A stretch of DNA of 64,000 bases, taken from assembly GCF_006345805.1 (NCBI RefSeq), contig NC_043024.1, positions 11,904,001 through 11,968,000 on the forward strand, in the 5' to 3' direction. Shown piece after piece: positions 12,107 through 35,003 of this stretch (position 1 is the first letter of the stretch; each line of letters opens with the position of its first letter). This DNA is from Octopus sinensis. Taxonomy: Eukaryota. Under the pieces are notes generated by a model. That model was not told where the DNA came from, did no database searches, and saw only the letters and a list, made by a program, of their open reading frames with translations. The position numbers were made by a program, and so were the translations under genes.

Positions 12107-12286
12107 CTGATAGAAATCAGAAAGCTTCATCAGTTGAAGAGATTGTGGTTGGTGCTGGCAAGAAATTTTTAGTCCAGGCCACAAAGACACAAGTCCGAAA
12201 CTGAGAAGATCCCTTTCCACGGTTATCAAACCCCCAGAAACTATAGGAGGACTACTGAGGAGGTTGAAATACAAAAGCCGGGAAAT

Positions 12287-12390: not shown

Positions 12391-12591
12391 GTAAGAATTC
12401 TAACTAATGAGAGAATTTCATTGAAATTGTGAAAATATTATTCTTATATTTCCTTGTAATTTTTCAGATTAAATTTGCATGTTTATGACTAAAACACAAT
12501 TATTTATAGATAATTAGTACTCATGGATAATTATTATAGTTAATAAAATTAATTGGTATACCTAATATACAGAAATTCTTGTAATATACAA

Positions 12592-13383
12592 AGGCGGCGA
12601 TCTGGCAGAAACGTTAGCACGTCGGGCGAAATGCTTAGCGGTATTTCTTCTGTCGCTACGTTCTGAGTTCAAATTCCGTCTACGTCAACTTTGCCTTTCA
12701 TCCTTACGGGGTCGATAAATTAAGTACCAGTTACGCACTGGGGTCGATATAATCGACTTAACCCGTTTGTCTGTCCTAGTTTGTCCCCTCTGTGTTTAGC
12801 CCCTTGTGGATAGTAAAGAAATAAGTATTTCGCCTTTCTTTATGTTCTGAGTTCAAATTCCGCCGAGGTCGACTTTGCCTTTTATCCTTTCGGGGTCGAT
12901 AAATTAAGTACCAGTTACGCACTGAGGTCGAAATAATCGACTTAATCCGTTTGCCTATCCTTGTTTGTCCCCTCTGTGTGTAGCCCCTTGTGGGTAGTAA
13001 AGAAATAGAAATAAGTATTTCGCCTGCCGTTACTTTCTGAGTTCAAATTCCGCCGAGGTCGACTTTGCCTTCCATCCTTTCGGGGTCGATAAATTAAGTA
13101 CCAGTTACGCACTGGGGTCAATATAATCATCTTAATCCGTTTGCCTGTCCTTGTTTGTCCCCTCTGTGTGTAGCCCCTTGTGGATAGTAAAGAAATAGAA
13201 GTAGGTATTTCGTCTGCCGTTACGTTCTGAGTTCAAATTCTGCCGAGGTCGACTTTGCCTTTCATCCTTTGGGAGTCGATTAAATAAGTACCAGTTACGC
13301 ACTCGGGTCGATATAATCAGCTTAATTCCTTTGTCTGTCCTTGTTTGTCCCCTCTTTGTCCCCTTGTGGGCAGTAAAGAAATA
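12592..13383 (+). mobile_element. SINE family B, head + 4 units (intron 1)
   Basis: TSD AGAAATTCTT(G/A)TAATATA. Confidence 0.85.
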
Positions 13384-13837
13384 AGAAATTCTTATAATAT
13401 AATTATTATTTTTTTTATTATAATCACTTGTATACAAGCGATTAAAATAATTAATACACAATTAATTATAACAATCATAATCTGTAGCAAGGTGGTGAGC
13501 TGGTAGAATCATAGCATGCTAGACAAAATGCTTACCACATATTTCGTCTGTCTTTACATTCTGAGTTCAAATCCTGCTCGGGTTGTCTTTACCTTTCATC
13601 TTTTTGAGAGCAATAAAACAACAGACTGTTGGCTTGGTACCCAAATTTGAAGACATTATTTATAATCTATAGTGTTATAGTTATACCAATCACAGATGTT
13701 AATTATAATGAATATTAAATTATTTTAATTATCAAAGAATGGTTATAAAAACAACAAATATACAGTAATTATTATAATTAATACGCAGTAATTATCATAT
13801 TACAGTTTTTATTCATATCATTTATGCAACTTTTATT

Positions 13838-14165
13838 ACTCTTTTACTTGTTTCAGTCATTTGACTGCGGCCATGCTGGAGCCATGCCTTTAGTCGAGCA
13901 AATCGACCCCGGGACTTATTCTTTGTAAGCCCAGTACTTTTTCTATCGGTCTCTTTTGCCGAACCGTTAAGTGACGGAGACGTAAACACACAAGCATCGA
14001 TTGTATATATATATATACATATATACGACAGGCTTCTTCCAGTTTCCGTCTACCAAATCCACTCACAAGGCTTTGGTCGGCCCGAGGCTATAGTAGAAGA
14101 CACTTGCCCAAGCTGTCACGCAGTGGGACTGAACCCGGAACCAAGCTACTTATCACACAGCCACA
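13838..14165 (-). mobile_element. tRNA-derived CORE-like SINE family A
   Basis: Matches the family A consensus (A box TGGCTGTGTGG, B box GGTTCAGTCCC, CACCTTGGGCAAGTGTCTT core, GTAAAAGA tail). Confidence 0.8.
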
Positions 14166-14809
14166 ATAAATTTTTATAATAATTAATTACTATAATTTAT
14201 GTGAAAGATATAATATTACTATTAATTAATCTGGGTAATCCACAATTATTATTGTAATGTAAAGTAATTATTATGACTACTAATATTAACGAGATTAATT
14301 TAAGGCGGTGAGCTGGCAGAATCGTTAGAACATGAGGTAGAGTGTTTAGCAACATTTTGTCTGTCTTTATGTTGTGTGTTCAAATTCTGCAAAGGTCGAC
14401 TTTGCCTTTCATCCTTTCAGGGTCGATAAAATAAGTACCAGTTGAGTACTGGGACTGATCTAATTGACTTAGTCTCCTCCCCTGAAATTGCTGGCCTTGT
14501 GCCAAAATTTGAAACCAATACTAATGAGGTTGACTGGCACATCAAAATCTTTTTGACATATATATATATATATATATATATACGTACGTACGTACGTACG
14601 TACGTATGTATGTATGTCATCGTCATCATCATCATCGTCGTTTAATGGCAACTCAATGCAAGAGCACCTTCATGGTCAACAGACCTGCTGGAAATACTAG
14701 TCAAATGCCCAGTCGAAACTCCTGTGGTCAAGAAGCTCGCTTTGTAAGCCTCAGGCTGACCAAAGCCTTGTGAGTGGATTTGGTAGACGGAAACTGAAAG
14801 AAGCCTGTC

Positions 14810-14871
<62 letters not shown>

Positions 14872-15065
14872 TTGTCCCCCTGCCACAATGTTGGTGTGTT
14901 TACGTCCCCATAACTTAGTGGTTTGGCAAAAGTCACTAATTGAATAAGTAATAGGTTTACAAATGCATAACTCCTAGGGTTGATTTATTCGGAAAAGGCG
15001 GTGCTCCAGCATGACTGCAGTCAAATGCCTGAAACAAATAAAAGAATAAAAGATAAAATATTTAT

Positions 15066-15350
15066 CATCATCATCATCATTTAACGTCCATTGTCCATGC
15101 TGGCATGGGTTGGATGGTTTGACTGGGCATGGTTTTCTACGGCTGGATGCCCTTCCTAACGCCAATCACTCCGAAAGTGTAGTGGGTGCTTTTTACGTGC
15201 CACTGACATGGGTGCCATTTGCATAACACTGGGGTATACCCATATGCCAGCGGCACGGGTGCCAATTTGCATGACACCAGTATCTACCATAACTGGTTTT
15301 TCTCGGGTTGATGAGTCTTCTTCTCAGACATGACATAATGCAAAAGGTCT
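15066..15350 (-). mobile_element. (GAT)n-tailed retroelement 3' end (family D; also 15770-15950, 34340-34675, 51480-51680, 53810-54060)
   Basis: Recurrent TTTAACGTCC..CCATGCTGGCATGGGTTGG..GCTGGATGCCCTTCCTAACG next to CAT/GAT tails. Confidence 0.65.
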
Positions 15351-15386
15351 TGGTCATTGCCCCATTTGGCCAACATTATGTATATA

Positions 15387-15419
<33 letters not shown>

Positions 15420-15568
15420 ATATATATAAATATATATACATATATACATATATATATATGCATATATATATACATACATATATATATAAATATATATATA
15501 TACATATATATGTATGTATGTATGTATGTATATACACATATATACACACACACATATATATACATACT

Positions 15569-15624
<56 letters not shown>

Positions 15625-15687
15625 CACACAAACACACATATATATACATATATATATGTATGTATACACACACGCACACACACACAT

Positions 15688-15719
<32 letters not shown>

Positions 15720-16303
15720 CTATATCTATATCTATCTATCTATCTATATATATGTATAAATATATCAACGTCATCATCATCATCGTCGTTTACTGTTCGC
15801 TTTCCATGCTGGCACGGGTTAGATGGTTTGACTGAGAGCTGGTGACCCAGAAGACTCCAATCTGATTTGGCAAGATTTCTACAGCTGGATGCCCTTCCTA
15901 ACGCCAACCACTTCGAGAGTGTAGTGGGTGCTTTTTATGTGCTGCCGGCTTTACGAACCACATGGTTCCGGGTTCAGTCCCACAGCGTGGCACCTTGGGC
16001 AAGTGTCTTCTACTATAGCCTCGGGCCGACCAAAGCCTTGTGAGTGGATTTGGTAGACGGAAACTGAAAGAAGCCCGTCGTATATATGCATATATATTTA
16101 TATGTATGTATATGTGTGTATATGTTTGCGTGTCTGTCTTTGTCCCCTCAACATCGCTTGACTACCGATGCTGATGTGTTTACGCCCCCCGACAATTATA
16201 GCAATCCCTGTTTGCATGATCAATAATCAATCATTTTAAATCTGGAATAATTCGTTTGTTGGAAGGGACTATCTTTGTGTCAGCAAACCTACATTACTGC
16301 TTA

Positions 16304-16423
16304 CCAACCACATGGTTCCGGGTTCAGTCCCACTTCGTGGAACCTTGGGCAAGTGTCTTCTACTATAGACTCAGACTGACCAAAGCCCATGAGTAGATTT
16401 GGTAGACGGAAACTAAAAGAAGC

Positions 16424-16478
<55 letters not shown>

Positions 16479-16682
16479 CTGTGTTTGTCCCCACCAACAT
16501 CGTTTGACAACTGATGCTGGTGTGTTTACGTCCCCGTAACTTAGCAATTCGGCAAAAAAGGACCGATAGAATAAGTACTGGACTTACAAAGAATAAGTCC
16601 TGGGTGTCGATTTGCTCGACTAAAGGCGGCGCTCCAACATGGCCACTGTCAAATGGCTGTAACAAGTGAAAGGGTAAAAAAG
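16304..16682 (+). mobile_element. SINE family A (5'-truncated)
   Basis: Consensus match with internal TA/TG microsatellite; near-identical copy at 34848-35210. Confidence 0.8.
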
Positions 16683-16971
16683 TAAATTTGTACGATTCTG
16701 TATATTAACCAATGAAATTCCAGCTTTGTCAAGATCACTTCTTTTCTTATTTCTGTTATTCTGAGACTTGGTCAGAATTTACAACTTCACCCCATGTCTT
16801 CCCAGATCTTTCTCTTTCACAGTACAATTCGCTTTGAGTGCAGCTGAGTGCACCTTTTATGCAGCTGCCTTCAACTTTGCACATCACATACCCACACCAC
16901 CACAGCTTTCTCTCTTGCAGACTATATCTGGCTCCTTTTATACACAGTTTTTATCTTAGATCACACATACT

Positions 16972-19579
16972 TATTTCTTTACTACCTCCAACGGGCTAAA
17001 CACAGAGAGGACAAACAAAGGCAGACAAAGGGATTAAGTCGATTATATCGACCCCAGAGCGTAACTGGTACTTATTTAATCGACCCTGAAAGGATGAAAG
17101 GCAAAGTCGACGTAGACGGGATTTGAACTCAGAACGTAGCAGTAGACGAAATACCTATTTCTTTACTACCCACAAGGGACTAAACACAGAGGGGACAAAC
17201 AAGGGCAGACAAACGGGTTAAGTCGATTATATCGACCCCAGAGCGTAACTGGTACTTATTTAATCGACCCTGAAAGGATGAAAGGCAAAGTCGACCTCGG
17301 CGGAATTTGAACTCAGAACGTAGCGGCAGTCGAAATACCTGTTTCTTTACTACCCACAAGGGGCTAAACACAAAGAGGACAAACAAAGGCAGACAAACGG
17401 ATGAAGTCGATTATATCGACCCCAGAGCGTAACTGGTACTTATTTAATCGACCCCGAAAGGATGAAAGGCAAAGTCGACCTCAGCGGAATTTGAACTCAA
17501 AACGTAACGGCAGACGAAATACCTGTTTCTTTACTACCCACAAGGGGCTAAACACAGAGGGGACAAACAAGGACAGACAAAGGGATGAAGTCGATTATAT
17601 CGACCCCAGAGCGTAACTGGTACTTATTTAATCGACCCCGAAAGGATGAAAGGCAAAGTCGACGTAGACGGGATTTGAACTCAGACGTAGCAGTAGACGA
17701 AATACCTGTTCTTTACTACCCACAAGGGCTAACACAGAGGGGACAAACAAGGACAGACAAAGGATAAGTCGATTATATCGACCCCAGAGCGTAACTGGTA
17801 CTTATTAATCGACCCCGAAAGGATGAAAGGCAAAGTCGACGTAGAGGGATTTGAACTCAGAACGGAGCAGTAGACGAAATACCTGTTCTTACTACCCACA
17901 AGAGGGCTAAACACAGAGGGGACAAACAAGGACAGACAAACGGATATTAAGCGATTATATACCCCGCCCCAGTGCGAAACTGGTACTTATTTAATCGACC
18001 CGAAGGATGAAAGGCAAAGTCGACCTCAGCGGAATTTGAACTCAAAACGTAACGGAGACGAAATACCTGGTTCTTTACTACCCACAAGGGGCGTAAACAC
18101 AGCGGGGACAAACAGGACAGACAAAGGGATGAAGTCGATTATATCGACCCCAGAGCGTAACTGGTACTTATTTAATCGACCCCGAAAGGATGAAAGGCAA
18201 AGTCGACGTAGACGGGATTTGAACTCAGAACGTAGCAGTAGACGAAATACCTGTTTCTTTACTACCCACAAGGGGCTAAACCACAGAGGGGACAAACAAG
18301 GACAGACAAACGGATTAAGTCGATTATATCGACCCCAGAGCGTAAATGGTACTTATTTAATCGACCCCGAAAGGATGAAAGGCAAAGTCGACGTAGACGG
18401 GATTTGAACTCAGAACGTAGCAGTAGACGAAATACCTGTTTCTTTACTACCCACAAGGGGCTAAACACAGAGGGGACAAACAAGGCAGACAAACGGATGA
18501 AGTCGATTATATCGACCCCAGAGCGTAACTGGTACTTATTTAATCGACCCCGAAAGGATGAAGGCAAAGTCGACCTCAATGGAATTGAACTCAAAACGTA
18601 ACGGCAGACGAAATACCTGTTTCTTTACTACCACACAAGGGCAAACACAGAGGGGACAAACAAGGACAGACAAAGGGATGAAGTCGATTATATCGACCCC
18701 AGAAGCGTAACTGGTACTATTTAATCGACCCCGAAAGGATGAAAGGCAAAGTCGACGTAGACGGGATTTGAACTCAGAACGTAGCAGTAGACGAAATACC
18801 TGTTTCTTTACTACCCACAAGGGGCTAAACACAGAGGGGACAAACAGGACAGACAAACGGATTAAGTCGATTATATCGACCCCAGAGCGTAACTGGTACT
18901 TATTTAATCGACCCCGAAAGGATGAAAGGCAAAGTCGACGTAGACGGGATTTGAACTCAGAACGTAGCAGTAGACGAAATACCTGTTTCTTTACTACCCA
19001 CAAGGGGCTAAACACAGAGGGGACAAACAAGGACAGACAAACGATTAAGTCGATTATATCGACCCCCAGTGCGTAACTGGTACTTATTTAATCGACCCCG
19101 AAAGGATGAAAGGCAAAGTCGACACTCAGCGGAATTTGAACTCAAAACGTAACGGCAGACGAAATACCTGTTTCTTTACTACCCACAAGGGGCTAAACAC
19201 AGAGGGGACAAACAAGGACAGACAAAGGATGAAGTCGATTATATCGACCCCAGAGCGTAACTGGTACTTATTTAATCGACCCCGAAAGGATGAAAGGCAA
19301 AGTCGACCTCAGCGGAATTTGAACTCAAAACGTAACGGCAGACGAAATACTGTTTCTTACTACCACAAGGGGCTAAACACAGAGGGGACCAACAAGGACA
19401 GCAAAGGGATTAAGTCGATTATATCGACCCCAGAGCGTAACTGGTACTTATTTAATCGACCCCGAAAGGATGAAAGGCAAAGTCGACCTCAGCGGAATTT
19501 GAACTCAGAACGTAGCGGCAGACGAAATACCGCTAAGCATTCCGCCCGGCGTGCTAACGATTCTGCCAGCTCGCCGCCT
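16972..19579 (-). mobile_element. SINE family B, head + ~14 tandem 183-bp units
   Basis: 16-bp TSD TTAGATCACACATACT at 16956-16971 and 19580-19595. Confidence 0.9.
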
Positions 19580-19619
19580 TTAGATCACACATACTGTGCC
19601 ATCGAGGCACACTGACATT

Positions 19620-21650
19620 ACACATTCAGCTTATATTCATGCTAAGCTCATTTCTTTCTATCTTTTGCAAATCCTTTGCATTCGGGGCCCACGTTTCACT
19701 ATCATATTGCACTGCACTCCAGCAAGGGGCCTCTCCTTCTCTGAAAGAGAGACCCCTTGTTGTCAGGAGAACCAGTAGCTCCCTGAAATTTTCTCACCTT
19801 GTTCTTATCTTAGCCATAATCTTGTAATCTCCACAACTGATTAAGTTACCTAGGTAACAAAAACTATTGACTAAGTCTGGGATGTCTTCTGAATAACTGA
19901 GAGAATCTCTTATTGTCTGGATACAGCGCAGGAGCGGCTGTGTGGTAAGTAGCTTGCTTACCAACCAATGGTTCCGGGTTCAGTCCCACTGCGTGGCACC
20001 TTGGGTAAGTGTCTTCTACTGTAGCCTCGGGCCGACCAAAGCCTTGTGAGTGGATTTGGTAGACGGAAACTGAAAGAAGCCCGTCGGATATATGTGTATA
20101 TATATATATGTATATATATGTGTGCGTGTATGTTTGTGTGTCTGTGTTTGTCCCCCTAGCATTGCTTGGCGACCGATGCTGTTGTGTTTACGTCCCCCGT
20201 CACTTAGCGGTTCGGCAAAAGAGACCGATAGAATAAGTACTGGGCTTACAAAGAAAAAGTCCCGGGGTCGAGTTGCTTGCTCGATTAAAGGCGGTGCTCC
20301 AGCATGGCCGCAGTCAAATGACTGAAACAAGTAAAAGAGTATACATTCCATTCTTAGTGCCCCTGTGCCCCTGTCTTGTATGCAGACTGCTTTTGCAGTT
20401 AGTCTCCTTGTGATTTTACTACTCCTCATGTGCCTCCACAGTTTACCCAGGGTACATCATATGGAGTTTCTGTTTACCCTTTTTCTGCCTTCTAAGTACA
20501 GACTCTTCTTGCCATAAGTTTAGTTTTGGCTATGCTTACTTTAAGACCCTTAAAATCTCGGTTTAGCTTCTGTATCGGGAATTTCTTTTCCAAATCTTCC
20601 ACAGGAGCGGCTGTGTGGTAAGTAGCTTGCTAATCAACCACATGGTTCCGGGTTCAGTCCCACTGCGTGGCACCTTGGGCAAGTATCTTCTGCTATAGCC
20701 TCGGGCCGACCAATGCCTTGTGAGTGGATTTGGTAGACGGAAACTGAAAGAAGCCCGTCGTATATATGTATGTATTTGTATATGTGTGTTTGCGTGTATG
20801 TTTGTGTTTGTCCCCCTAGCATTGCTTGACATCTGATGCTGGTGTGTTTACGTCCCCGTCACTTAGCGGTTCGGCAAAAGAGACCGATAGAATAAGTACT
20901 GGGCTTACAAAAGAATAAGTCCCGGGGTCGATTTGCTCGGCTAAAGGCGGTGCTCCAGCATGGCCTTAGTCAAATGACTGAAACAAGTAAAAGAGTAAAG
21001 AGTAAAAGAGAGATCCTATTATATGAACAAGGTCATTAGCATGCAGGTAAAATCATCTGCTATAGTAAACAGAAGAGGGCTGAGCACAGAACCTTGATGG
21101 ATCCCTCGCTACCCATTAGATTCCTCATTGTATTCATTGTTAACTTTTGCTGATGGCAACTCTGTACCTAATTTGCACAGCATTCATTAATCCTTCTTTT
21201 ACCTCCTAACTTCCTTGGAACTCACCAGACGACAGAACTAGGGATGCTATTAAAGGGTTTTACCAAGTGTATGGACGTTAAGTAGAGAGTCAAGTATTTT
21301 TGCTGCAGCTGTCTCCGTAGGAAGATGGCATCGATCCTACTATCCTGTCACGAAACCCAACTGAATCTCATTAAGGTTGTTCCTAATCAATTTTATAATT
21401 TCGGTAACTTTCATGATCTTGTGCAAGAATTTAACACTATTGCAGTTTCCTGTCTCTCTTTAGAGAATATTTTTGTTTCGTAACAGTTCACAATAAAGCT
21501 ACTGCTATGTCAATCTTTAAGTATGATACATCCTTGTATTATCTGATTGACTAATTGCGTGACTAAACAATATCCTACTTTGCCAGTTATTTTAAGCTTC
21601 TCAACAACTGTATTGTTTGATAAATATTTCAAACAATATTAATAGCGTTC
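19620..21650 (-). mobile_element. Fossil RTE-like LINE reverse transcriptase with two nested family A SINEs (19927-20340, 20602-21008)
   Basis: Minus-strand remnants QLGF..G, GIHQGSVLSPLLF, KGLKVSIAKTK, SFCYLG..IS, FRELL.LLTT.GLS, DSETWA...DLQKIERNE; many stops. Confidence 0.8.
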
Positions 21651-21715
21651 AGTAAATCACTATACATATCCATCATTTTCTGTTAAAATATCTTACTGAC
21701 GAGTTTCATTTCTTC

Positions 21716-21804
21716 ACTTCCCTGAAGAGAAGATTACATTGTTTTACACCATTTTATTCCTTTGGAATAATATCAGTGAAATCTTCGAAACATGTGTCGG
21801 AAGT
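21716..21804 (+). ncRNA. Type I hammerhead ribozyme, canonical core
   Basis: Stem I ACTTCC/GGAAGT; CTGAAGA 21722-28; stem II GAAGATT/AATCTTC; GAAA 21787-90; C-ATGT-GTC; predicted cleavage after 21798. Confidence 0.85.
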
Positions 21805-21990
21805 AAAAGTATTTGAATTACACCTGCGTAAATCTCCATTTATTTATTTATATATTATACAAAAGATTCCACGTAAACCCGAAGTTTCTACCTTTAAAAA
21901 CAAGGAGTTACAACCTCTTGTGTGATTTTTTGCTACTCAGGTAACTATTTATCTATCTTTGGGTGTTAATTGTTAACAAGGGAAAATACA

Positions 21991-22060
<70 letters not shown>

Positions 22061-22114
22061 TATAGTGTAGGTGCATGGCTTAGTAGTTAGGGCAGTGAGT
22101 TCAATTCCCAGCGA

Positions 22115-22352
22115 CGCATTGTGTCCTTGAGCAAGACACTTTATTTCACATTGCTCCAGTCCACTCAGCTGGCAAAAATGGTTTACCTGTATTTCAAAGG
22201 GCCAGCCTTGTCACACCTGTGTCACGCTGAATCTCCCTGACAACTACATTAGGGGTACACATGTCTGTGGAGTGCTCAGCCACTTGCACATTATTTCGTG
22301 AGCAAGCTGTTCTGTTGATCGTATAAGCTGGGACCCTCATTATTTTAACTGA
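22115..22352 (+). mobile_element. tRNA-derived SINE (family also at 53375-53705)
   Basis: A/B boxes, GTGTCCTTGAGCAAGACACTTTATTTCAC..CTCCAGTCCACTCAGCTG. Confidence 0.7.
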
Positions 22353-22394
22353 GAAGTGCCCTATATTAATATATATATATATATAATATATATA

Positions 22395-22444
<50 letters not shown>

Positions 22445-23625
22445 AATACATATATATATATATATTATATGTAGTCATTACAGATATAGGGTGAAAGATG
22501 ATTAATTTAATAAAATCAACAAATTTCACCTAGTAGTATTTCGGTATGGAAAAGGACCATATTCGGTAAAAACTTATCCAAATATTTTTTTATATATAAT
22601 TATAACAATAAGGGTTTTGCAACAAGTTGCTTGACCACATACCGAAAATTTTAGAAATAGCAGCCAAAGGACTACTATTTCCTTTTCCTACAAAACTATG
22701 TCTCCACAGACAACAATATTTGTAACACACATATGGCAAAAAAAAAAGAAGAAAAATAATGGAATCAAAGTCTTCGATTAATTATGGACGCGTTTCTGGA
22801 TTAGAATCATAAGGTTCATTTCCTTCATCGACATAATATTCCGATAAATTTCGGTATGTGGTCAAGCAACTTGTTGCGAAACCCTTGTTGTTATAATTAT
22901 ATATATATATATATATATATTATAATATATATATATATATATATTGTTATATTTCGGAATGGTCATATTGCCAGTTTAGCCAATAAAACACACGCGCTAC
23001 TATATTTGGTGTTATTTTGCTTCAGTGATATTTATTTTTTACATTAATCTTAATCTTATTTCGGCCAAAGTTCTTTCGTCACACTCCTGTGACCGCATCA
23101 GTGGTCCTTTGTTTTCTTCTCACTTACTTGTGTCTCTCCTTACTAACCGTCAGCCATTTTGTATTTCGATTGTATTTTATTGGCTAAACTGGCAATATGA
23201 CCATTCCGAAATATAACAATATCTGTTTCAACACACGACTTCACATAAAAAATCTTGCACAACAAATATTTAAACGTATATATATATATATATTATATAT
23301 ATATACATATATATACATATATATATATAACATTTATATATATATTTTAAAATGTAGAGGTAACACACAAGTAAATAGATATTTATGAAAAAGAAGAACA
23401 AAAAATATGGCTGACGGTTAGTAAGGAGCGACACACAAATAAGAAAGAAGAAAGTAAAGGACCACCGATGCGGTCACAGGAGTGTGACGAAAGAACTCTG
23501 GCCGAAATAAGATTAAGATTAATGTAAAAAATAAATAACGCTGAAGCAAAGTAACACCAAATATATAGTGCGTGTGTTTTTATTGGCTAAACTGGCAAAA
23601 TGACCAATCCGAAATACAACAATAA

Positions 23626-24692
23626 GAACAAAAATGCTACTTTTTAAAATTAGGTACATTTAAATTTCTTTATAATAAATACATCAAAAAAATGTTTTTG
23701 TTTTACATGATTCGGTTTTTTTATAAACCTTATTAAAAATATGTACTTAAAGGAAATATGTAGAGAAATAAATTATTAATAAAATTATTAATAAAATAAA
23801 CATTCATAGTACTTTTCTTTTTCCTGCAAGGGCACGTGGTAATTTCCATTAATTTTCGTGGCATTGCCTGTAGCAATTTAGGTAGGTGTCTGTGGTGGTA
23901 AATTAAGTAGTGTAGTCAAAACTGTTTTCAAAAGGAGTGGCTACAGCAGTCAAATAAGCAGCAGCAGCAGCAATAATAGTCGTCGTAAAGTTATCTCCCC
24001 TGAGGTCTTCACAGAAATGGATTTATTCAATGTCTCATCTTTATTCCTTATGAATAATATACATTAATATACATATAGTTTCAGTGTTCTGAGCTTAAAG
24101 AATTTAGACTCGGTTGACACTTTCTTATGAAATGCATTTCCTTGCCAATGAGTTCATTTTGGCTAGCATTGTCTTTGAATTTGTATAATGGAAAAGTTGT
24201 GAATTTGGGATGTTTATTGGATGTACATCTATGTGTTCGCTGACAAATATTTTCCTGTATTCCAGAATTCTAATTTGGTATTTGTGTACTACCATCCTCT
24301 GTCGTAGGGTGTTTTTTGTGTGTCCCATATATTGCCATTTGCATCCCGAGCATGTAAAGTTAGTTTTTATGGTAAAATTTTGGCCTTGTTCTAATCGGCG
24401 TTCTGATCCTTCTATTATGTTGATACAGATCCCACAGTTGGGCTTCCCGCACTTTTTACTGTCGGCTTTGTGGTTATTGTTGAGTGTAAGTTGGCAGGAA
24501 AAAGAAAAATACACTATAAACGTTTATTAATAGTTTTATTAATAATTTATTTCTCTACATATTTCATATAAGTATATATGTTTAATAAGGTTTATAAACA
24601 ACCAAAACATGTAAAACAAAACATTTTAAAATGTATTTATATAAAGAAATTTTAATGTACTTAATTTTAAAAAATAGCATTTTCGTTCTTTT
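23626..24692 (-). mobile_element. Penelope-like element fragment: GIY-YIG endonuclease remnant between ~200-bp inverted repeats
   Basis: ORF 24125-24514 CGKPNCGIC..F.IKTNFTC..C..QYMGHTKNTLRQRMVVHK..VSEH; inverted repeats ~23626-23830 and ~24490-24692. Confidence 0.8.
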
Positions 24693-24694
24693 TC

Positions 24695-24753
<59 letters not shown>

Positions 24754-24808
24754 CGGAGATGTACTTGCATAGCGAGTGACTTGATCTGAGATCGTGTGCT
24801 GGAACGAA

Positions 24809-25004
24809 AGCAATTGCAGCGTGGAAGGTGTTATAAGCATTTAAGAAACACACAAAGCCGTTAGATTCACTTCACCATTTAAATTTAATTTGTCAAAATA
24901 TTTTCGTCGCTTTGACACCGCGACAAATTTAATTTAAATGTTGAAGTGAATCTAACGGTTTTGTGTATTTCTTAAATGGCTTATAAACACCTTCCACCCT
25001 GCAA
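24809..25004. repeat. Inverted repeat, ~83-bp arms, ~30-bp loop
   Basis: AATTGCAGCGTGGAAGGTG..AATTTGTC mirrored by GACAAATT..CCTTCCACCCTGCAATT. Confidence 0.85.
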
Positions 25005-25129
25005 TTATATATATATATATATATATATATAGTTAATCCAAACATGAAAACACAAGGAGAAAACACAACACGAGGACGTGGTACAAGTATAGTGTACCAC
25101 GTCCTCAGGAAATGAAGGAAAGAAGGAGG

Positions 25130-25164
25130 ATTTAACGTTTCGAGCGGAGCTCTTCGTCAGAAAC
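25130..25164 (-). ncRNA. Minimal Penelope-type hammerhead motif
   Basis: Minus: GTTT-CTGACGA-A-GAGC tcc GCTC-GAAACGTT-AAAT; ACGT palindrome; short stem I, GUU site. Confidence 0.55.
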
Positions 25165-25743
25165 ATAGGAAGAGGAAAGATCCAAGGAAGGGAAGACGGA
25201 AGAAACAAATCGCCAACGATACACACGCGGTCACATGTTGAATATATATATATACATATATGCTAATGAAGGTGGCTATATACAATACAAAACCTAAAAG
25301 GAAAACTTCTACTGCCATTAATTGTGATTGAGGGTGTAGGGTAGCACCTACTTTGCTAGAAATGAGAGCTAAAGTGCCCTTAGAGCCACAAGAAGCACAT
25401 TTTCATATACTGACAGGGGAGATAACCCCCCACACACAGCGAGCGAGATCACTATACTATAGTTTCGTTTGATATACATATTTGCTTGTTTGTGTGTGTG
25501 TGTGTGTGTTTGTTTCCATTTGCACTCTACAGAACTCGCTACAAGCAATGTTGAGTGTTGCATCTTCTCTTAGCAAATTGTCCCCTCACTTTACACCTTC
25601 AGAGACATGTGAAATGAGAGACCCTTCATTTGAAAAATAAGTAAGGATTAGGAAGAGGAAAAAATAGACAGCTATAAAGCAATGCAACAGTAACCTCTAT
25701 ACATCTAACCTCTAACACATGCCGGCATAGAAAAGCTGACATA

Positions 25744-26253
25744 CCGTAAATCCTCGAGTATAATCCGCATTTATTTCCCAAAATTTAAAGGTCAAAATCC
25801 CTACTGCGTACTATACACGAGTTTAAAAATGAAAAATATTTTCTAAGCAATGTCCGAGTCTCTATTTGCTGTCCGGCAATGTTTATTCAGACGCATTTTG
25901 TGATGTCGGGCGCGAAAATACCTTAAGCTAAGCCTGAAAGCAATGAAGTCATAAAAGAATCATCCATAACTTGCAGTAAGCAACATTTATTAAACGTTAT
26001 TACTGTTATTTCTTTATTTTCTGCAAACAAAATGCACAAAAAAGCTACGTTTGCATTATGTTATATATACAATAATAATAAAGGATGTTACTGTATACAG
26101 ATTTACAAACTAAGGACGTTATATAGACCTCCTTGCCTCAAGTTAGAGAAGGGGTGCGTATTATACATGAGGTTTAGGTTTTTCAGCGGTACAGCCTCCT
26201 AAAACTCCCCTGCGTATTATACTCAAGGGTGGGCTATACTCGAGGATTTACGG
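25744..26253 (+). mobile_element. pogo-family MITE
   Basis: TIR CCGTAAATCCTCGAGTATA, TA target; reverse copy at 42858-43366. Confidence 0.85.
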
Positions 26254-26560
26254 TTAAACAAGTGAATGAAATATATATTTTTTTATTTGCTATCTTTTAT
26301 TTAAATGTGTTTGAATTGAATTTGTCTGCAGCCAAGAATTCAAGTGTTTTTAGTTGATAACATCAACTACGAAAACCATATCAGTTTAATACATATATCA
26401 TTGATATCTTGTTTGCCAAAGTCATAAAATTAATCTTTATCTAAAGTGATGCAATACAGCACAAGAGCTTACAAGGGGTGACCTAAAACACGGACACCAA
26501 TACACAGATAAGGTTAGTGAACTGCTAGTCGTTTGAAGAGTATGTGACAAAATGCTTAGT

Positions 26561-27085
26561 GGAGGCACATGGCCTAGTGGTTAGAGCAGCGGACTCGCGG
26601 TCGAGGGATCGCGGGTTCGAATCTCAGACCGGGCTATGTGTGTGCTTATGATCGAAACACGTAAGCTCCATGCGGCTCCGGCAGAAGGTAATGGCGAACT
26701 TCTGCTGACTTTTTCGCCACAACTTTCTCTCACTCTTTCCTCCTGCATCTTGCAGCTCACCTGCGATGGACTGGCTTCCCGTACAGGTGGGGAACCTATA
26801 CACCAAGGAAACCGGGAAACCGGCCCTTGTGAGCCAGGGATGGCTTGAGAAGGAGCAAACAACAACAAAAACAATATATATATATGTGTGTGTGTGTGTG
26901 TGCGTGTGTGGAGGCACATAGCCTAGTGGTTAGAGCAGCGGACTCGCGGTCGAGGGATCGCGGGTTCGAATCTCAGACCGGGCTATGTGTGTGCTTATGA
27001 TCGAAACACCTAAACTCCACGCGGCTCCGGCAGAAGGTAATGGCAAACTTCTGCTGACTCTTTCGCCACAACTTCCTCTGTCTCT
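26561..27085 (+). mobile_element. tRNA-derived SINE family C (full copy plus truncated tandem copy)
   Basis: A box TGGCCTAGTGGTTAGAGC, B box GGTTCGAATC, (CAA)n tail; relatives at 52104-52395 and 59282-59940. Confidence 0.8.
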
Positions 27086-27139
27086 GTACTCACCTGAAGT
27101 CAGCTTTGCGTTTTATCCTCCATTTTTTTATTCTCTTTT

Positions 27140-27444
27140 CTCTTTTACTCTTTTACTTGTTTCAGTCATGTAATTGTGGCCATGCTGGAACACCGCCTTT
27201 AGTCGAGCAAATCGACCCTCAGGACTTATTCTTTGTAAGCCTAGTACTTATTCTATCGGTCTCTTTCGCCGAACCGCTAAGTTACGGGGACGTGAACACA
27301 CCAGCATCGGTTGTCATACGATGTTGGGGGACAAACACAGACACGCAAGCATATACATACATATATATACACAAACATACACACTCACCACACACACACA
27401 CACACACACACACTACAATATATATAATATATATAATTATATAA

Positions 27445-27540
<96 letters not shown>

Positions 27541-27702
27541 CAACGGGCTTCTTTCAGTTTCCACCTACCAATACCACTCACAAGGCTTTGGTCGGCCCGA
27601 GGCTATAGTAGAAGACACTTGCCCAAGGTGCCACGAAGTGGGACTGAACCCAGAACCATGTGGTTGGTAAGCAAGCTTCTTACCACACAGCCACTCCTGC
27701 AC
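27140..27702 (-). mobile_element. SINE family A
   Basis: Consensus match with an expanded (TA)n core. Confidence 0.8.
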
Positions 27703-27759
27703 CTATAATGATAATGTTTAATAACGAAAATTTAAGCATGTAGTTATTCATTTTGCTCG

Positions 27760-28485
27760 CTAAAGTTTGGTGGAAGATTTTAATTAATTTTAAATATAAT
27801 TTAATTAATTTTAAATATAACAAAGAATTTAGTAAAATAACTTAGTTATCATTAAGCTAGTGTTAGGAACATAAATTGTGACTAAGGTTTGGTGGAAGAT
27901 TTTAATTCAGAACTTTTGAAAACAAGACATTTATACTACAGAGCCAGAGGTGGTTTCAACCAGGTTGGTATCGAAAGGGTTAAAATTGTTTCTCTATTAT
28001 ATATTTTAAAACCTTTTTGTTACCATATTTCTGTTTAGATGCTCTGTGTTTCTTTCAATTACTTTAAATATAACAAAGAATTTAGTAAAATAAATTGGTT
28101 ATCATTAAGCTAGTGTTAGGAACATAAATTGTGACTAAGGTTTGGTGGAAGATTTTAATTCAGAACTTATGAAAACAAGACATTTGTACTACAGAGCCAG
28201 AGGCTGTTTCAGCCAGGTTGGTATCGAAAGAGTTAAAAATTGTTTCTCTATTATATATTTTAACCCTTTTGTTACCATATTTCTGCTGAGATGCGCTGTG
28301 TTTCTTTCAATTAATTTTAAACATTAAGAATTTAGTAAAATAACTTAGTTATCATTCAGCTAGTATAAGGAACATAAATTGTGACTAAGGTTTGGTGGAA
28401 GATTTTAATTCAAAACTTATGAAAACAAGATATTTGTACTACAGACCCAGAGGCGGTTTCAGGGAGGATGGTATCAAAAGGGTTA
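27760..28485 (+). mobile_element. piggyBac-like MITE tandem array (~3 units)
   Basis: TTAA-CCCTTTTGTTACC ... GGTATCAAAAGGG-TTAA termini, ~250-bp period. Confidence 0.8.
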
Positions 28486-28798
28486 GTAATGAAAACCACA
28501 ACCAGATAGTATGACAGTATAACCCCTTCCTCTTATAATTCGCTCTTTCCCTATTTCTTTTTTCTTTCTTTATTTTTCTCTCTGTTATCTGTTTTTGTTT
28601 CTTTGTAGTTACTCTGGATATTTCTACCAATAGGTGGTGCTGTAAGCTAATTTTGGTGTATTACACCATTTGTCTACAGCGAATATTCTCCATAACAAAA
28701 TACAGCGAGTAACTTTTTTATGGGTTCGAATATGCTCCAAGCATATTTGAAATGGTGATGACCTAGTGTTAATCCATGTGGATAAATACTGAACATAT

Positions 28799-29478
28799 AG
28801 TTACCTCTGCCTTGGCGAAGGCGGGGGTATTGTTTTCAGTCATATTTGTTTGTCTGTCCATAGACAAGATATTTCAAGAACTAATGGATGGATTCGAATG
28901 AAACTATCAGAGATGTTTGGCCTCATGACTGGCATGAACCGATTAGATTTTGGGATCGATCTGACACCAGACAAGGGTTCTAGATTATTTTTTCCTGTTT
29001 TATTTTTACTAAATTCTTGTGAGCAGTAAGGTTTCATTTTTAGCATTCTCGTTTGTCAGAGCAGTCTAGTTTATTTCAAACTAGCAGTAATGCCCGGCGT
29101 TGCTCGGGTTTGTAAGGGAAATAACTATATAAGCATTTTTAGAGAGTTACTTCCCTTATATAAACCGAGCAAAAAATACATTAAAAAAACGAAAACATGA
29201 TGGTAAATTTTATTTTTAAATCGTAGACTCATCGTAGACGCGCGCTAATACCCAGAAGGGCTCGATATGAATCACGACTATAAGATACCCGCTTTTGGGT
29301 AAACTGAACCGCAAAATGTGGGAGTAGTTAGGAATCTAAATCGGAGGAGACAGACTCTCACACAACTTCAGATTTATATATAAAGATATTTTCATTTTAA
29401 AGATCATCTCCGGCTAATCATTGAGAGGACGTTGGTGTTGCCTTGGTGGAGGTTTGTGCTCTCTGAGTGCTCTTGTTT
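28799..29478 (+). mobile_element. Unclassified non-autonomous element with nested Helitron
   Basis: TTACCTCTGCCTTGGCGAAGG start and CCTTGGTGGAGGTTTGTGCTCTCTGAGTGCTCT end; related start at 63910-64000. Confidence 0.5.
29081..29386 (-). mobile_element. Non-autonomous Helitron
   Basis: Minus strand 5'-TC...hairpin CCCGAGCAACGCCGGG...CTAG-3', inserted between A and T. Confidence 0.8.
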
Positions 29479-29759
29479 ATAATACATTCATATCAAATTC
29501 TCTGGTAATGTACAGATGGCTTCCCCTATAGACTGGCTTCCAATCTACTTCGGCTCTATCTTTTCCAATCACTTCTTAAAACTATACTAAAGATGTAGTG
29601 ACAGATGAATAACAAACAAATACATGCATTGCCATAAAGTGAATGGCTTCATAATAGCATTCTATAGTAAGAGACTATGAAACGGACGTTGGTTTAACAT
29701 TTATTTGGTTAAAAATATTGTGTTTTAACCTAGAAATGCATAACTTTACTCTCTCTCTC

Positions 29760-30192
29760 TCTCTTTACTCTTTTACTCTTTTACTTGTTTCAATCATTTG
29801 ACTGTGGCCATGCTGGAGCACTGCCTTTTTAGTCGAGCAAATCGACCCTAGGACTTATTCTTTGTAAGCCTAGTACTTATTCTATCGGTCTCTTTTGCCG
29901 AACCGCTAAGTGACGGGGACGTAAACACAGCAGCATCGGTTGTCAAGCAATGCTAGGGGGACAAACACAGACACACAAACACATACACACACACATACAT
30001 ATATATATATACATATACATATATATAAGGCGTGCTTCTTTCAGTTTCCGTCTACCAAATCCACTCACAAGGCATTGGTCGGCCCGGGGCTATAGCAGAA
30101 GACACTTGCCCAAGATGCCACGCAGTGGGACTGAACCCGGAACCATGTGGTTGGTAAACAAGCTACTTACCACACAGCCACTCTTGCGCCTA
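29760..30192 (-). mobile_element. SINE family A
   Basis: Consensus match. Confidence 0.8.
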
Positions 30193-30547
30193 TCGAAATC
30201 TGTGCCAAAAGGTACACTTTTTTAAATGTAATAAACAGAATAAAAATACCACACATAGTGGCTGTGTGGTGAGGAGTTTGTTTACCAACCACATGGTTCT
30301 GGGTTTTAGCTGAAGAAATCGATCCCAGAACTTCGGTCTCTTTTGCTGAACTGCTAAGTTATGGAGACATAAACACACCAGCATCAGCTGTCAAGCGATG
30401 GTAGGGACACAAATACAGACACACATACATAAATACATACACAAACACACAAATAATATGATAACATAATATGATATAATATAATATAATATAATATAAT
30501 ATATATATATAATATAATATAATATAATATATATAATATAATATATA

Positions 30548-30615
<68 letters not shown>

Positions 30616-30984
30616 ATATATTATATATATATTAATTATAATAAAGGGTTAATTGCAACAAGTTCCTCAAATAGGGTGGGATTTCGTTATTTTCTTTCCC
30701 TTTAACATATACGGGTTACAAATTCTGTTTGTTTGTGGAGACGTTTTAATTAGTAGGAGAAATAGTGATCTATTTGGCTGCTATTTCTAATATTTTCGGT
30801 ATGTGGTTTTGAGCAACTTGTTGCAATTAACCCTTTATTATAATTAATATAATTCTTACCAAATATGGTCCTTTTCCATACCGAAAAATCTACTAGGTGA
30901 AATTTATTAATTTTATAAAATTAATAAATCTACTAGGTGAAATTTATTAATTTTATAAAATTAATTATATTTCACCCTTTTTTG

Positions 30985-31018
<34 letters not shown>

Positions 31019-31252
31019 AAGTGAGATAGGGGTTATGAGTGTAACCCACTATGGGATACCAGTTAGGCTGAAACAGCTGTAAGATCCCTTTTATGTGTAT
31101 TATTTTTATGGTATTATCTTACTTATTGATGTATATTGTTTTATTCTGTTGGATTTGGATGTGCCTATTTAAGTAGTTAATAAATAATATGAAATGGTAA
31201 TATCTGTAAGTCGATGATTGAAAGGAATCTATTCCTCCATTTCCTTATTTGC

Positions 31253-31292
<40 letters not shown>

Positions 31293-31475
31293 AATAATGA
31301 GGGAGATAAATTAATATTAATTTTAATATCAATTTAAAACCAGTAGTCCAGCATGCAAAAAATCTGAGAAGTCAGAGAAAATTCTAATATAGAGTATTTC
31401 CTTGTAGTTTGATCGTTGATGGTCTATTTCTAGCATACGGCCGACTCCCTAGCAGTAAGCCCTGCCAATATATAT

Positions 31476-31539
<64 letters not shown>

Positions 31540-33552: not shown

Positions 33553-33639
33553 AAGCATATACAATAATAGAAAATGCAGCAGAGGATGTTGTCTTGTGTT
33601 TTAACATTGTGAAGGTATGTGCGTGAGATGGAGATCGAG

Positions 33640-33658
33640 TCTACTACTACGACCACTA

Positions 33659-33752
<94 letters not shown>
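33640..33752. repeat. (CTA)n
   Basis: Direct inspection. Confidence 0.97.

Positions 33753-34638: not shown

Positions 34639-34677
<39 letters not shown>

Positions 34678-34972: not shown

Positions 34973-35003
<31 letters not shown>

What the first reader, a model, noticed from the sequence alone, without database searches (positions are those of the whole stretch)
21716..21804. Intact hammerhead ribozyme in the sense strand of intron 1
Seen: all core nucleotides present (CUGAAGA, GAAA, GUC), 6-bp stem I and 7-bp stem II. Stem II extends (CATTG/CAGTG) to a terminal TTATTCC-ttt-GGAATAA hairpin. Stem III ACAUGUGU is self-complementary, with central U-G pairs. Known: Penelope-like elements and retrozymes carry type-I hammerheads with palindromic stem III that cleave as dimers. 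Inference: the SSPO-like pre-mRNA could be cut co-transcriptionally at 21798/21799, affecting splicing of a 25-kb intron or releasing a small RNA.
Basis: partly seen in the sequence, partly recalled or inferred. Interest (0 to 1): 0.75.

Follow-up and report, generated by a model that had tools for sequence, protein, structure and literature searches.

The report
Transposon-borne hammerhead ribozyme in octopus intron
The hammerhead ribozyme motif is really there and intact, but it is one of several copies left by a small ribozyme-carrying mobile element in this octopus gene, so it is an ordinary relic of a known kind rather than a demonstrated regulator of the gene.

Summary
Window 21716-21804 (+) carries every hammerhead core nucleotide, a 6-bp helix I, a 7-bp helix II with a long extension, and a self-complementary helix III. 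Cleavage would fall at 21798/21799.

It is not chance. None of 8000 shuffled windows gave a motif this good. A diverged second copy lies at 35626-35710 (-), with 5 of 18 helix pairs changed on both sides and the core untouched.

Both copies are about 0.3 kb: the ribozyme plus a tail of roughly 190 nt that ends at a (TA)n microsatellite. This fits the ribozyme-bearing terminal repeats of Penelope-like elements and the animal non-LTR retrozymes.

The host gene is the Octopus vulgaris SCO-spondin-like gene.

The functional inference is not supported:
- Helix III is barely stable in a single copy.
- The only other copy in the intron is antisense.
- Native flanks favour a fold that buries the core, by 5-10 kcal/mol.
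- The motif scores below Rfam's threshold (26.2 against 34 bits).

Verdict: a real hammerhead motif and a new member of a known kind; cleavage of the pre-mRNA is untested and probably weak.

The parts
21716..21804 (+). Copy A, the finding: a type I hammerhead motif. Helix I 21716-21721 / 21799-21804; core CTGAAGA 21722-21728; helix II 21729-21735 / 21780-21786 with extension 21736-21779; GAAA 21787-21790; helix III 21790-21797; C17 at 21798; predicted cleavage at 21798/21799.
21805..21995 (+). Tail of copy A, about 190 nt and non-coding, homologous to the tail of copy B. It ends at a (TA)n microsatellite that starts at 21996.
   Evidence: Local alignment. nhmmer with A finds B at E = 5.1e-12 over the ribozyme plus about 155 nt of tail. 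Frames checked: the tail of B has stops in all three frames.
35428..35711 (-). Copy B, about 285 bp. Hammerhead at 35626-35710: helix I TTTTC/GAAAA, CTGATGA, helix II GAAGGC/GCCTTC, the same extended helix II with the TTATTCC...GGAATA hairpin, helix III ACATATGT, then GTC. A tail of about 200 nt follows and ends at (TA)n. Copy B sits inside an octopus SINE and is antisense to the host gene within the same intron 1.
12391..37607 (+). Intron 1 of the SCO-spondin-like gene, with GT...AG ends, 25,217 nt. Exon 1 is 12287-12390 (signal peptide). Exon 2 is 37608 to about 37805.
   Evidence: Protein P0001 mapped by tblastn. Splice sites read.
21060..21640 (-). Degenerate reverse-transcriptase fragment of a non-LTR (LINE) element on the opposite strand. 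It places the 5' edge of copy A between about 21640 and 21716.
   Evidence: Representative search: 38 relatives at E <= 1e-3. All ten relatives tested carry Pfam RVT_1. The fragment itself gave no Pfam or PDB match.
21709..21730 (+). Predicted competing hairpin. The upstream TTCTTCA (21710-21716) pairs with the core TGAAGA(G) (21723-21729), with the helix I 5' strand in the loop.
   Evidence: ViennaRNA folds with native flanks.
54667..54756 (-). Related but distinct hammerhead-like motif C1: long helix II, palindromic helix III ACAATTGT, H17 = A. It is defective (U.U at 10.1-11.1; helix I only 4 bp). It lies in a short element bounded by (TA)n on both sides, about 54545-54810.
   Evidence: Model R1 hit at 18.2 bits. 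Sequence read. Comparison with the intact copy in O. vulgaris, L004 48750-48840.
25130..25164 (-). Minimal hammerhead-like motif: GTTT|CTGACGA|A|GAGC-TCC-GCTC|GAAA|CG|TT|AAAT. It has an unpaired A before G10.1 and a palindromic ACGT in place of helix III. At this level of match it could be chance.
   Evidence: Descriptor hit. Null rate 0.011-0.038 per window. No Rfam hit.

Best explanation
The candidate is a genuine type I hammerhead ribozyme motif with an intact sequence. It was not built by the host gene. It arrived with a short retroelement of about 0.3 kb, made of the ribozyme plus a non-coding tail of about 190 nt, that inserted at a (TA)n microsatellite.

This architecture matches two related known things: the ribozyme-bearing terminal repeat (pLTR) of Penelope-like elements, and their non-autonomous derivatives, the animal non-LTR retrozymes.

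In the source element, the ribozyme would have processed multimeric element transcripts, probably as a dimer through the self-complementary helix III. That step is inferred from the literature.

In its present place, as a single sense copy 9.4 kb into a 25.2-kb intron, it is most likely a relic. It cleaves the SCO-spondin-like pre-mRNA rarely or not at all and has no dedicated host function. That step is inferred from fold predictions and from published activities of this ribozyme class.
For: Motif and significance:
- All core nucleotides and all helices are present.
- No motif of equal quality appeared in 8000 shuffled windows.

Family membership by homology:
- A second copy, B, at 35626-35710 (-) shares the unusual extended helix II and the tail. 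nhmmer gives E = 5e-12.
- Of 18 helix pairs compared between A and B, 5 changed on both sides and 97% of cells remain paired. Slid controls give 31-44% paired. The core is invariant.
- A model built from A and B finds only these two copies in the window, at 109 and 100 bits; the next hit scores 18 bits.

Element context:
- A, B and the related motif C1 all end at (TA)n, 165-200 nt after the ribozyme.
- All three begin within about 76 nt upstream of the ribozyme.
- (TA)n target bias, and copy ends a little over 100 nt downstream of the ribozyme, are published traits of Penelope-like elements (PMC8557442, PMC11167929).
- Units of 170-400 nt with low GC are published traits of retrozymes (PMC7229834). 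A and B are 280-284 nt with GC 0.31-0.36.
- Penelope-like elements are abundant in O. vulgaris (PMC13282606).

Low expected activity:
- Helix III pairing probability is about 0.04 in a single copy.
- The active fold is disfavoured by 5.4 to 9.8 kcal/mol once 5' flank is present.
- The only other copy in the intron is antisense and could pair with A at -70.6 kcal/mol.
- Hammerheads of metazoan Penelope-like elements cleave poorly in vitro (PMC4209133).
Against: - No reverse transcriptase / GIY-YIG reading frame adjoins A or B. The link to Penelope-like elements therefore rests on architecture and literature, not on a demonstrated parent element.
- No tandem copies are present, so the defining arrangement of a retrozyme is absent here.
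- The units are not strongly self-paired (z = -1.4 to -2.2).
- Only two family members could be compared, because no octopus genome could be searched.
- Both copies keep an intact core although the tails are only about 65-70% identical. The orthologous copy in the O. vulgaris reference differs at 1 of 89 positions, against about 5% divergence in the flanks (Poisson p about 0.04). This is compatible with some constraint.
- Invertebrate type I hammerheads with a 2-bp helix III plus a tetraloop can cleave as single copies (PMC7229834, PMC7761336). Activity cannot be excluded from sequence alone.
Confidence: 0.72

Rival explanations
1. The ribozyme is active in the nascent SCO-spondin-like transcript, cuts intron 1 at 21798/21799 during transcription, and thereby lowers or modulates splicing and expression, or releases a small RNA.
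For: - The core is intact and helices I and II are stable in isolation, with pairing probability above 0.9.
- The copy is in the sense strand.
- About 15.8 kb of intron remains to be transcribed after the ribozyme, which gives minutes for cleavage (my arithmetic).
- The ribozyme shows fewer substitutions than its flanks between two Octopus genomes: 1 observed against about 4.9 expected.
- Some invertebrate type I hammerheads with a short helix III cleave as single copies (PMC7229834).
Against: - Helix III is marginal.
- Native flanks favour inactive folds by 5-10 kcal/mol.
- No sense partner is available for a dimer.
- The single orthologous substitution falls in helix III and removes its central pairs.
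- Hammerheads of Penelope-like elements show low activity in vitro (PMC4209133).
- In the one Penelope-like element examined for it (Anolis), no RNA-seq reads began or ended at the hammerhead cleavage site (PMC11167929).
- The conservation signal is weak (p about 0.04), and a neighbouring 120-nt stretch has no substitutions either.
Confidence: 0.12
2. The motif is a chance match in AT-rich repetitive DNA.
For: - It scores below Rfam's gathering threshold (26.2 against 34 bits).
- Scaled to a genome of about 2.8 Gb, the Rfam E-value is about 0.4 for that single family (my arithmetic).
- Relaxed descriptors do hit shuffled sequence, at 0.038 per window.
Against: - There were 0 equally good motifs in 8000 shuffles.
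- A homologous second copy exists with the same helix II extension and tail (E = 5e-12) and with compensatory changes.
- A third, related family member lies in the same window and in the O. vulgaris reference.
Confidence: 0.02
3. The element has been taken over by the host for something other than cleavage. One possibility is that the long conserved helix II, or the A/antisense-B pair, forms a double-stranded RNA structure inside intron 1 that serves as an RNA-editing or protein-binding platform.
For: - The extended helix II architecture is conserved between A and B, with covariation.
- A and the antisense copy of B could form a duplex of -70.6 kcal/mol within the same intron.
- Both insertions are shared with the O. 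vulgaris reference.
Against: - Conservation of helix II between paralogues is explained by selection on the mobile element itself.
- The same intron holds many longer and more similar inverted SINE pairs, up to 551 nt at 91% complementarity, which would dominate any double-stranded RNA formation.
- No hit appeared in the Argonauta locus, which holds 10 kb of flank on each side of the matched gene.
Confidence: 0.04

Closest known systems
[quoted passage not shown]
   Same: - Type I topology, a long helix II (7 bp), a G10.1-C11.1 pair, and a palindromic helix III suited to dimer formation.
- Most genomic copies are solitary and dispersed, sometimes paired on opposite strands.
- The copy ends one to two hundred nt after the ribozyme.
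- Insertion at (TA)n (PMC8557442, PMC11167929).
   Different: - No adjoining reverse transcriptase / GIY-YIG reading frame was found for A or B.
- There is no unpaired nucleotide between A9 and G10.1.
- Helix III keeps extra palindromic nucleotides rather than being absent.
- Helix II carries a conserved extension of about 44 nt ending in a distal hairpin. None of the papers I read describes such an extension.
Metazoan non-LTR retrozymes (Cervera & de la Pena 2020, PMC7229834; Li, Clavereau & Pollet 2026, bioRxiv 10.64898/2026.07.22.740005)
   Same: - Type I hammerhead, a unit of about 280-285 nt, and GC of 0.31-0.36.
- Solitary single-unit copies scattered through the genome, many of them in introns (about 43% in Xenopus).
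- Proposed derivation from the pLTRs of Penelope-like elements.
   Different: - There is no tandem arrangement at either locus.
- The units are not predicted to be strongly self-paired (z = -1.4 to -2.2).
- No evidence on circular RNA was available.
Dimer-dependent hammerheads of newt satellite 2 and Schistosoma Sm-alpha (the seed type of Rfam RF00163)
   Same: The Rfam model for this type aligns end to end. Helix III is a short self-complementary stretch that is modelled as fully paired only in a dimer.
   Different: Helix II is 4 bp plus a small loop in those ribozymes, against 7 bp plus a long extension here. The score is therefore below the family threshold. Copy B is not reported even at E <= 1.
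Conserved intronic ribozymes of vertebrates (hammerheads HH9/HH10; the CPEB3 HDV-like ribozyme, PMC10919898)
   Different: Those are single-copy and conserved across classes of vertebrates. This one is a member of a repeat family, is shared only between two very close Octopus genomes, and gave no hit in the Argonauta locus.

Membership tests
Hammerhead ribozyme, type I | Conserved core: C3 U4 G5 A6 N7 G8 A9, G12 A13 A14, A15.1-U16.1, and H17 not G | tested here: met
   All present in A and in B.
Hammerhead ribozyme, type I | Three helices around the core, with helix I open-ended | tested here: met
   Helix I is 6 bp and helix II is 7 bp, each with pairing probability above 0.9 in isolation. 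Helix III is only 2-3 bp, or 8 bp as a dimer.
Hammerhead ribozyme, type I | Rfam RF00163 gathering score (34 bits) | tested here: not met
   A scores 26.2 bits. It is not reported in the whole-window scans. B is not reported at E <= 1. The shortfall comes from the long helix II insertion.
Hammerhead ribozyme, type I | Helices supported by compensatory changes among relatives | tested here: met
   Between A and B, 5 of 18 pairs changed on both sides and 97% of cells are paired, against 31-44% in slid controls. Only two sequences were available, so support is limited.
Hammerhead ribozyme, type I | Site-specific self-cleavage yielding 2',3'-cyclic phosphate and 5'-OH ends | not testable with these tools
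   Needs in vitro transcription or RNA end mapping.
Hammerhead ribozyme, type I | Tertiary contact between helix I and helix II elements | not tested
   No canonical loop 1 / loop 2 pair is recognisable. Whether the internal loop of the extended helix II could substitute is unknown.
Hammerhead in the pLTR of a Penelope-like element | Lies in a terminal repeat flanking a reverse transcriptase / GIY-YIG reading frame | tested here: not met
   Upstream of A is a LINE reverse-transcriptase fragment on the other strand. Upstream of B is a SINE. The only GIY-YIG-like reading frame (24128-24523, minus strand) is 2.3 kb away, convergent, and shares no sequence with A. Most published genomic copies are likewise solitary.
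Hammerhead in the pLTR of a Penelope-like element | Long helix II, a G10.1-C11.1 pair, palindromic 15.2-16.2 and loop 3 | tested here: met
   judged against the criteria in PMC4209133.
Hammerhead in the pLTR of a Penelope-like element | Unpaired nucleotide between A9 and G10.1 | tested here: not met
   Absent in A and B. Present only in the separate minimal motif at 25130-25164.
Hammerhead in the pLTR of a Penelope-like element | Insertion at a microsatellite, with the copy ending one to two hundred nt past the ribozyme | tested here: met
   A ends at (TA)n at 21996. B ends at (TA)n at about 35425. C1 is bounded by (TA)n on both sides.
Metazoan non-LTR retrozyme | Head-to-tail tandem units of 170-400 bp, each with a type I hammerhead | tested here: not met
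   The window has a single unit at each locus and no tandem partner. Unit size and GC do fit.
Metazoan non-LTR retrozyme | Expressed as small circular RNAs with a highly self-paired fold | tested here: inconclusive
   Circular folds of the units give z = -1.4 to -1.7 only. No expression data were available.
Domesticated intronic ribozyme | Single-copy orthologue conserved across distant species | tested here: not met
   It is a member of a repeat family. It is shared with the O. vulgaris reference, but no hit appeared in the Argonauta hians locus L005.

The most novel reading that the evidence does not exclude
Octopus genomes may carry an undescribed and possibly abundant family of elements with these traits:
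- about 0.3 kb long and targeted to (TA)n microsatellites;
- a type I hammerhead with a conserved, long, branched helix II, which standard Rfam annotation misses;
- activity recent enough to produce lineage-specific insertions.

Sense-strand copies that keep an intact core inside long introns, such as this one in the SCO-spondin-like gene, might then measurably cut host pre-mRNAs.
Probability: 0.1. Interest if true: 0.6.

Novelty: new member of a known kind. Interest (0 to 1): 0.3.

Why it matters
Hammerheads carried by Penelope-like elements and retrozymes are already known to be scattered through animal genomes, including introns. One more copy is therefore not surprising.

Three points are modestly useful:
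- This octopus variant has a conserved extended helix II. It falls below Rfam's threshold, and copy B is not reported at all, so routine annotation will under-count such ribozymes in cephalopods.
- The window gives a clean small case of covariation between two diverged copies.
- Sense and antisense copies sit in one 25-kb intron of an expressed gene. That is a convenient natural test of whether transposon-borne ribozymes ever cut host transcripts.

If cleavage were shown in vivo, the interest would rise clearly.

Tried and rejected
- **Rfam at gathering threshold and whole-window E-value scan:** no hammerhead reported. The E-value scan was dominated by spurious microRNA hits in microsatellites.
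- **Copies outside the window:** two exact-pattern scans of metagenome contigs gave 0 and then 3 hits. The 3 were chance matches lacking the family's helix II extension.
- **Protein search with the 89-aa stop-free frame across the ribozyme:** no homologue. The tails are non-coding.
- **Protein search with the GIY-YIG-like reading frame at 24128-24523 (-):** no homologue and no Pfam match. No other endonuclease-like segment exists in the window. I could therefore not retrieve Penelope-like elements from octopus to compare their ribozymes.
- **Is the 690 bp upstream of A part of the element?** Rejected. It is a LINE reverse-transcriptase fragment on the opposite strand, although Pfam and PDB searches of the fragment itself were negative.
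- **Retrozyme-style rod-like or circular fold of the 280-nt units:** only z = -1.4 to -2.2.
- **Joint alignment of families A/B and C for a broader model:** MAFFT misaligned them, so no second model was built.
- **Argonauta hians orthologous locus (L005):** no significant hit with model R1.
- **CTGACGAG at 21696-21703 and the repeat at 7554/8624 containing CTGACGAG:** neither has GAAA and helices in register, so neither is a hammerhead.

Full report
**Observation.** The stretch 21716-21804 (+) reads ACTTCC|CTGAAGA|GAAGATT...AATCTTC|GAAA|CATGTG|TC|GGAAGT. Every conserved hammerhead nucleotide is present: C3 to A9, G12 to A14, A15.1, U16.1 and C17. Helix I has 6 Watson-Crick pairs. Helix II has 7 pairs starting with G10.1-C11.1. 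It continues through CATTG/CAGTG to a TTATTCC-ttt-GGAATAA hairpin. Helix III (ACAUGUGU) is self-complementary with two central G.U pairs. The predicted cleavage site is 21798/21799.

**Rfam.** Rfam's Hammerhead_1 model aligns end to end to exactly these coordinates when 301 nt are searched, at 26.2 bits and E = 1.9e-4. That is below the curated threshold of 34 bits. The motif is missed in the whole-window scans, because helix II holds 54 nt where the model expects 10.

**Is it more than chance?** I wrote a descriptor requiring the core, contiguous helices I and II, a helix II region of up to about 100 nt, and U16.1 followed by H17. It found three motifs in the real window.
- In 8000 dinucleotide shuffles of the window (512 Mb, both strands), the relaxed descriptor hit 0.038 times per window.
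- Adding a self-complementary helix III gave 0.011 per window.
- Helix I >= 5 with helix II >= 6 gave 5 hits in all.
- Helix I >= 6 with helix II >= 7, the candidate's level, gave none.
- Scaling the Rfam E-value to a whole genome of about 2.8 Gb gives roughly 0.4 for that one family (my arithmetic). The candidate alone would therefore be borderline genome-wide, and a second line of evidence matters.

**A second, homologous copy.** The descriptor's second hit, 35626-35710 (-), is a diverged copy of the same ribozyme; I call it B. It reads TTTTC|CTGATGA|GAAGGC...GCCTTC|GAAA|CATATG|TC|GAAAA. It has the same extended helix II, including the TTATTCC...GGAATA distal hairpin.
- Homology continues through a non-coding tail of about 190-200 nt. 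In both copies the tail stops at a (TA)n microsatellite.
- nhmmer with A as query finds B at E = 5.1e-12 and finds nothing else in the window.
- On the A/B alignment, 97% of cells in 18 helix pairs are standard pairs. Five pairs changed on both sides: two in helix I and three in helix II and its extension. Sliding the partner columns gives 31-44% paired and 0-1 double changes.
- The catalytic core is invariant.
- A covariance model built from A and B scores them at 109 and 100 bits; the next hit in the window scores 18 bits.
- A chance origin is excluded. The ribozyme fold was under selection while the two lineages of the element diverged.

**Host gene.** A protein search with the window's exon-like frames returned 'SCO-spondin-like [Octopus vulgaris]' (P0001).
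- Exon 1 (the signal peptide) maps to 12287-12390, and exon 2 begins at 37608. The intron has GTAAGA...TTTCAG boundaries.
- Later exons encode EGF, VWD, C8 and TIL domains.
- Intron 1 is therefore 12391-37607, or 25,217 nt.
- Copy A lies in the sense strand, 9.4 kb into the intron. Copy B lies in the same intron but antisense.

**What the element is.**
- The 5' side of A is bounded by a degenerate LINE reverse-transcriptase fragment on the opposite strand (21060-21640). It has 38 relatives at E <= 1e-3, and all ten that I tested carry Pfam RVT_1. A therefore begins within 76 nt of the ribozyme.
- B begins exactly at helix I, where it interrupts an octopus SINE. The SINE resumes after B's (TA)n.
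- Each copy is thus about 0.3 kb: ribozyme first, then the tail, then (TA)n.
- A third motif of a related but distinct family, C1 (54667-54756, minus strand, helix III ACAATTGT, long helix II), has the same layout and is bounded by (TA)n on both sides.
- These traits match published descriptions of Penelope-like elements and their derivatives:
  - type I hammerheads with a long helix II, G10.1-C11.1 and palindromic helix III, found mostly as solitary dispersed motifs (PMC4209133);
  - (TA)n target bias and complex or inverted insertions (PMC8557442);
  - reverse transcription starting about 110-120 nt into the reading frame that begins at the ribozyme, which fixes the copy's 3' end shortly after the ribozyme (PMC11167929);
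  - non-LTR retrozymes of 170-400 nt with low GC (PMC7229834), now argued to derive from the pLTRs of Penelope-like elements, with many solitary intronic units (bioRxiv 10.64898/2026.07.22.740005).
- Penelope-like elements are abundant in O. vulgaris (PMC13282606). Rfam-based annotation counted 235 Hammerhead_1 loci in the giant squid (PMC6962438).
- I could not show a parent element. No reverse transcriptase / GIY-YIG frame adjoins A or B, there is no tandem partner, and the units are not strongly self-paired.

**Comparison with the O. vulgaris reference.** Locus L004 (OX597840.1) overlaps the window but is only about 95-97% identical, with many indels. The window therefore comes from a sister taxon or a divergent haplotype.
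- Both A and B are present at the orthologous positions.
- B is identical. A differs at one base: T21793 is A in the reference, in the centre of helix III.
- The flanks of A differ by about 5-6%. One substitution against about 4.9 expected gives p of about 0.04. That is weak, and a nearby 120-nt stretch is also unchanged.
- The Argonauta hians locus gave no hit.

**Would it cut the pre-mRNA?**
- In isolation, helices I and II form with probability above 0.9. Helix III has a probability of about 0.04 and costs +0.6 kcal/mol.
- Two copies of A gain about 10 kcal/mol as a dimer. The intron holds no second sense copy, however.
- The antisense copy B could instead pair with A, at -70.6 kcal/mol against -40.9 for the two folded separately.
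- With 30 to 150 nt of native flank on both sides, structures that keep helices I and II are 6.4 to 9.8 kcal/mol worse than the minimum, and helix I has zero predicted probability. With flank only on the 3' side the penalty falls to 1.6-3.5 kcal/mol. One competitor is a hairpin between the upstream TTCTTCA and the core TGAAGA.
- Metazoan Penelope-like-element hammerheads cleave poorly in vitro. Single motifs show no detectable cleavage (PMC4209133).
- In the Anolis element, no RNA-seq reads began or ended at the cleavage site (PMC11167929).
- On the other side, invertebrate type I hammerheads with a 2-bp helix III plus a tetraloop can work as single copies (PMC7229834, PMC7761336).
- Folding during transcription would also present the ribozyme before the distal competitors, though not before the upstream hairpin.
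- I rate measurable cleavage in vivo at roughly one in eight. No RNA data were available to test it.

**Verdict.** It is best explained as a relic of a short (TA)n-targeting retroelement of the Penelope-like / retrozyme kind. It is a new member of a known kind, with an extended helix II that standard annotation misses. An effect on the host gene is possible but unsupported.

Noticed in passing
window 35428-35711 (-): A second, diverged copy of the same hammerhead-plus-tail element, antisense in the same intron 1 and inserted inside an octopus SINE. Rfam does not report it even at E <= 1.
   Followed up: yes
window 54545-54810 (-); L004 48750-48840 (-): A related hammerhead family, C, with helix III ACAATTGT and H17 = A. 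The window's copy is defective (U.U at 10.1-11.1). The O. vulgaris reference has an intact copy about 345 bp away in corresponding coordinates. The surrounding 1.5-kb segments (window 53252-54825, L004 47735-49251) are not homologous. Different insertions have therefore accumulated at the same (TA)n-rich spot in the two genomes, which suggests recent activity.
   Followed up: partly
window 25130-25164 (-): A minimal hammerhead-like motif (GTTT CTGACGA A GAGC-TCC-GCTC GAAA CG TT AAAT). It has the unpaired nucleotide before G10.1 and the palindromic ACGT typical of minimal hammerheads of Penelope-like elements. It is also present in L004 (19354-19388). At this stringency it could be chance (0.01-0.04 per window).
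   Followed up: partly
window 24084-24523 (-): A reading-frame remnant that by eye resembles a zinc-knuckle plus GIY-YIG endonuclease (CGKPNCGIC ... YMGHTKNTLRQR ... frameshift ... ELIGKEMHFIRKCQPSLN), as in Penelope-like elements. Pfam and the word-indexed protein search found nothing, so this remains unconfirmed.
   Followed up: partly
whole window against L004 (O. vulgaris GCA_951406725.2, OX597840.1:33909884-33978325): The window is not the reference O. vulgaris sequence. Aligned blocks are 89-98% identical with many indels, while the coding exons match P0001. It is a sister species or a strongly divergent haplotype.
   Followed up: partly
window 51193-51396 (+); L004 genes 10001-58442 and 58519-68442: The public gene model looks fragmented. 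P0001 (380 aa) omits an exon at 51193-51396 that encodes the second half of a VWD domain; the Argonauta protein P0003 includes it. A second VWD/C8/TIL/LDLa gene is called only 77 bp downstream. Together they are probably one long SCO-spondin-like gene.
   Followed up: no
window 21060-21640 (-): A degenerate non-LTR (LINE) reverse-transcriptase fragment directly upstream of the candidate. Its relatives carry RVT_1, and some also carry a PHD finger.
   Followed up: yes
window 21709-21730 (+) and 21716-21804 with 35626-35710: Two predicted competitors of the active fold. The first is an upstream hairpin, TTCTTCA/TGAAGA, that buries the core. The second is a long-range duplex of -70.6 kcal/mol between copy A and the antisense copy B in the same intron.
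   Followed up: partly
window, many sites (e.g. 2223-2890, 16967-19280, 32437-33527, 60143-61072): Arrays of a SINE-like unit with a period of about 184 bp, in both orientations. They form inverted repeats of up to 551 nt at about 91% complementarity within and around intron 1.
   Followed up: no
window 1273-1970, 11659-12110, 15378-15709, 31460-31582 and others: The E-value-mode Rfam scan returns more than 200 sub-threshold 'microRNA' hits (mir-297, mir-3149, mir-1277 and others). All lie in (TA)n, (CA)n or (CATA)n microsatellites, so they are artefacts of low complexity.
   Followed up: no
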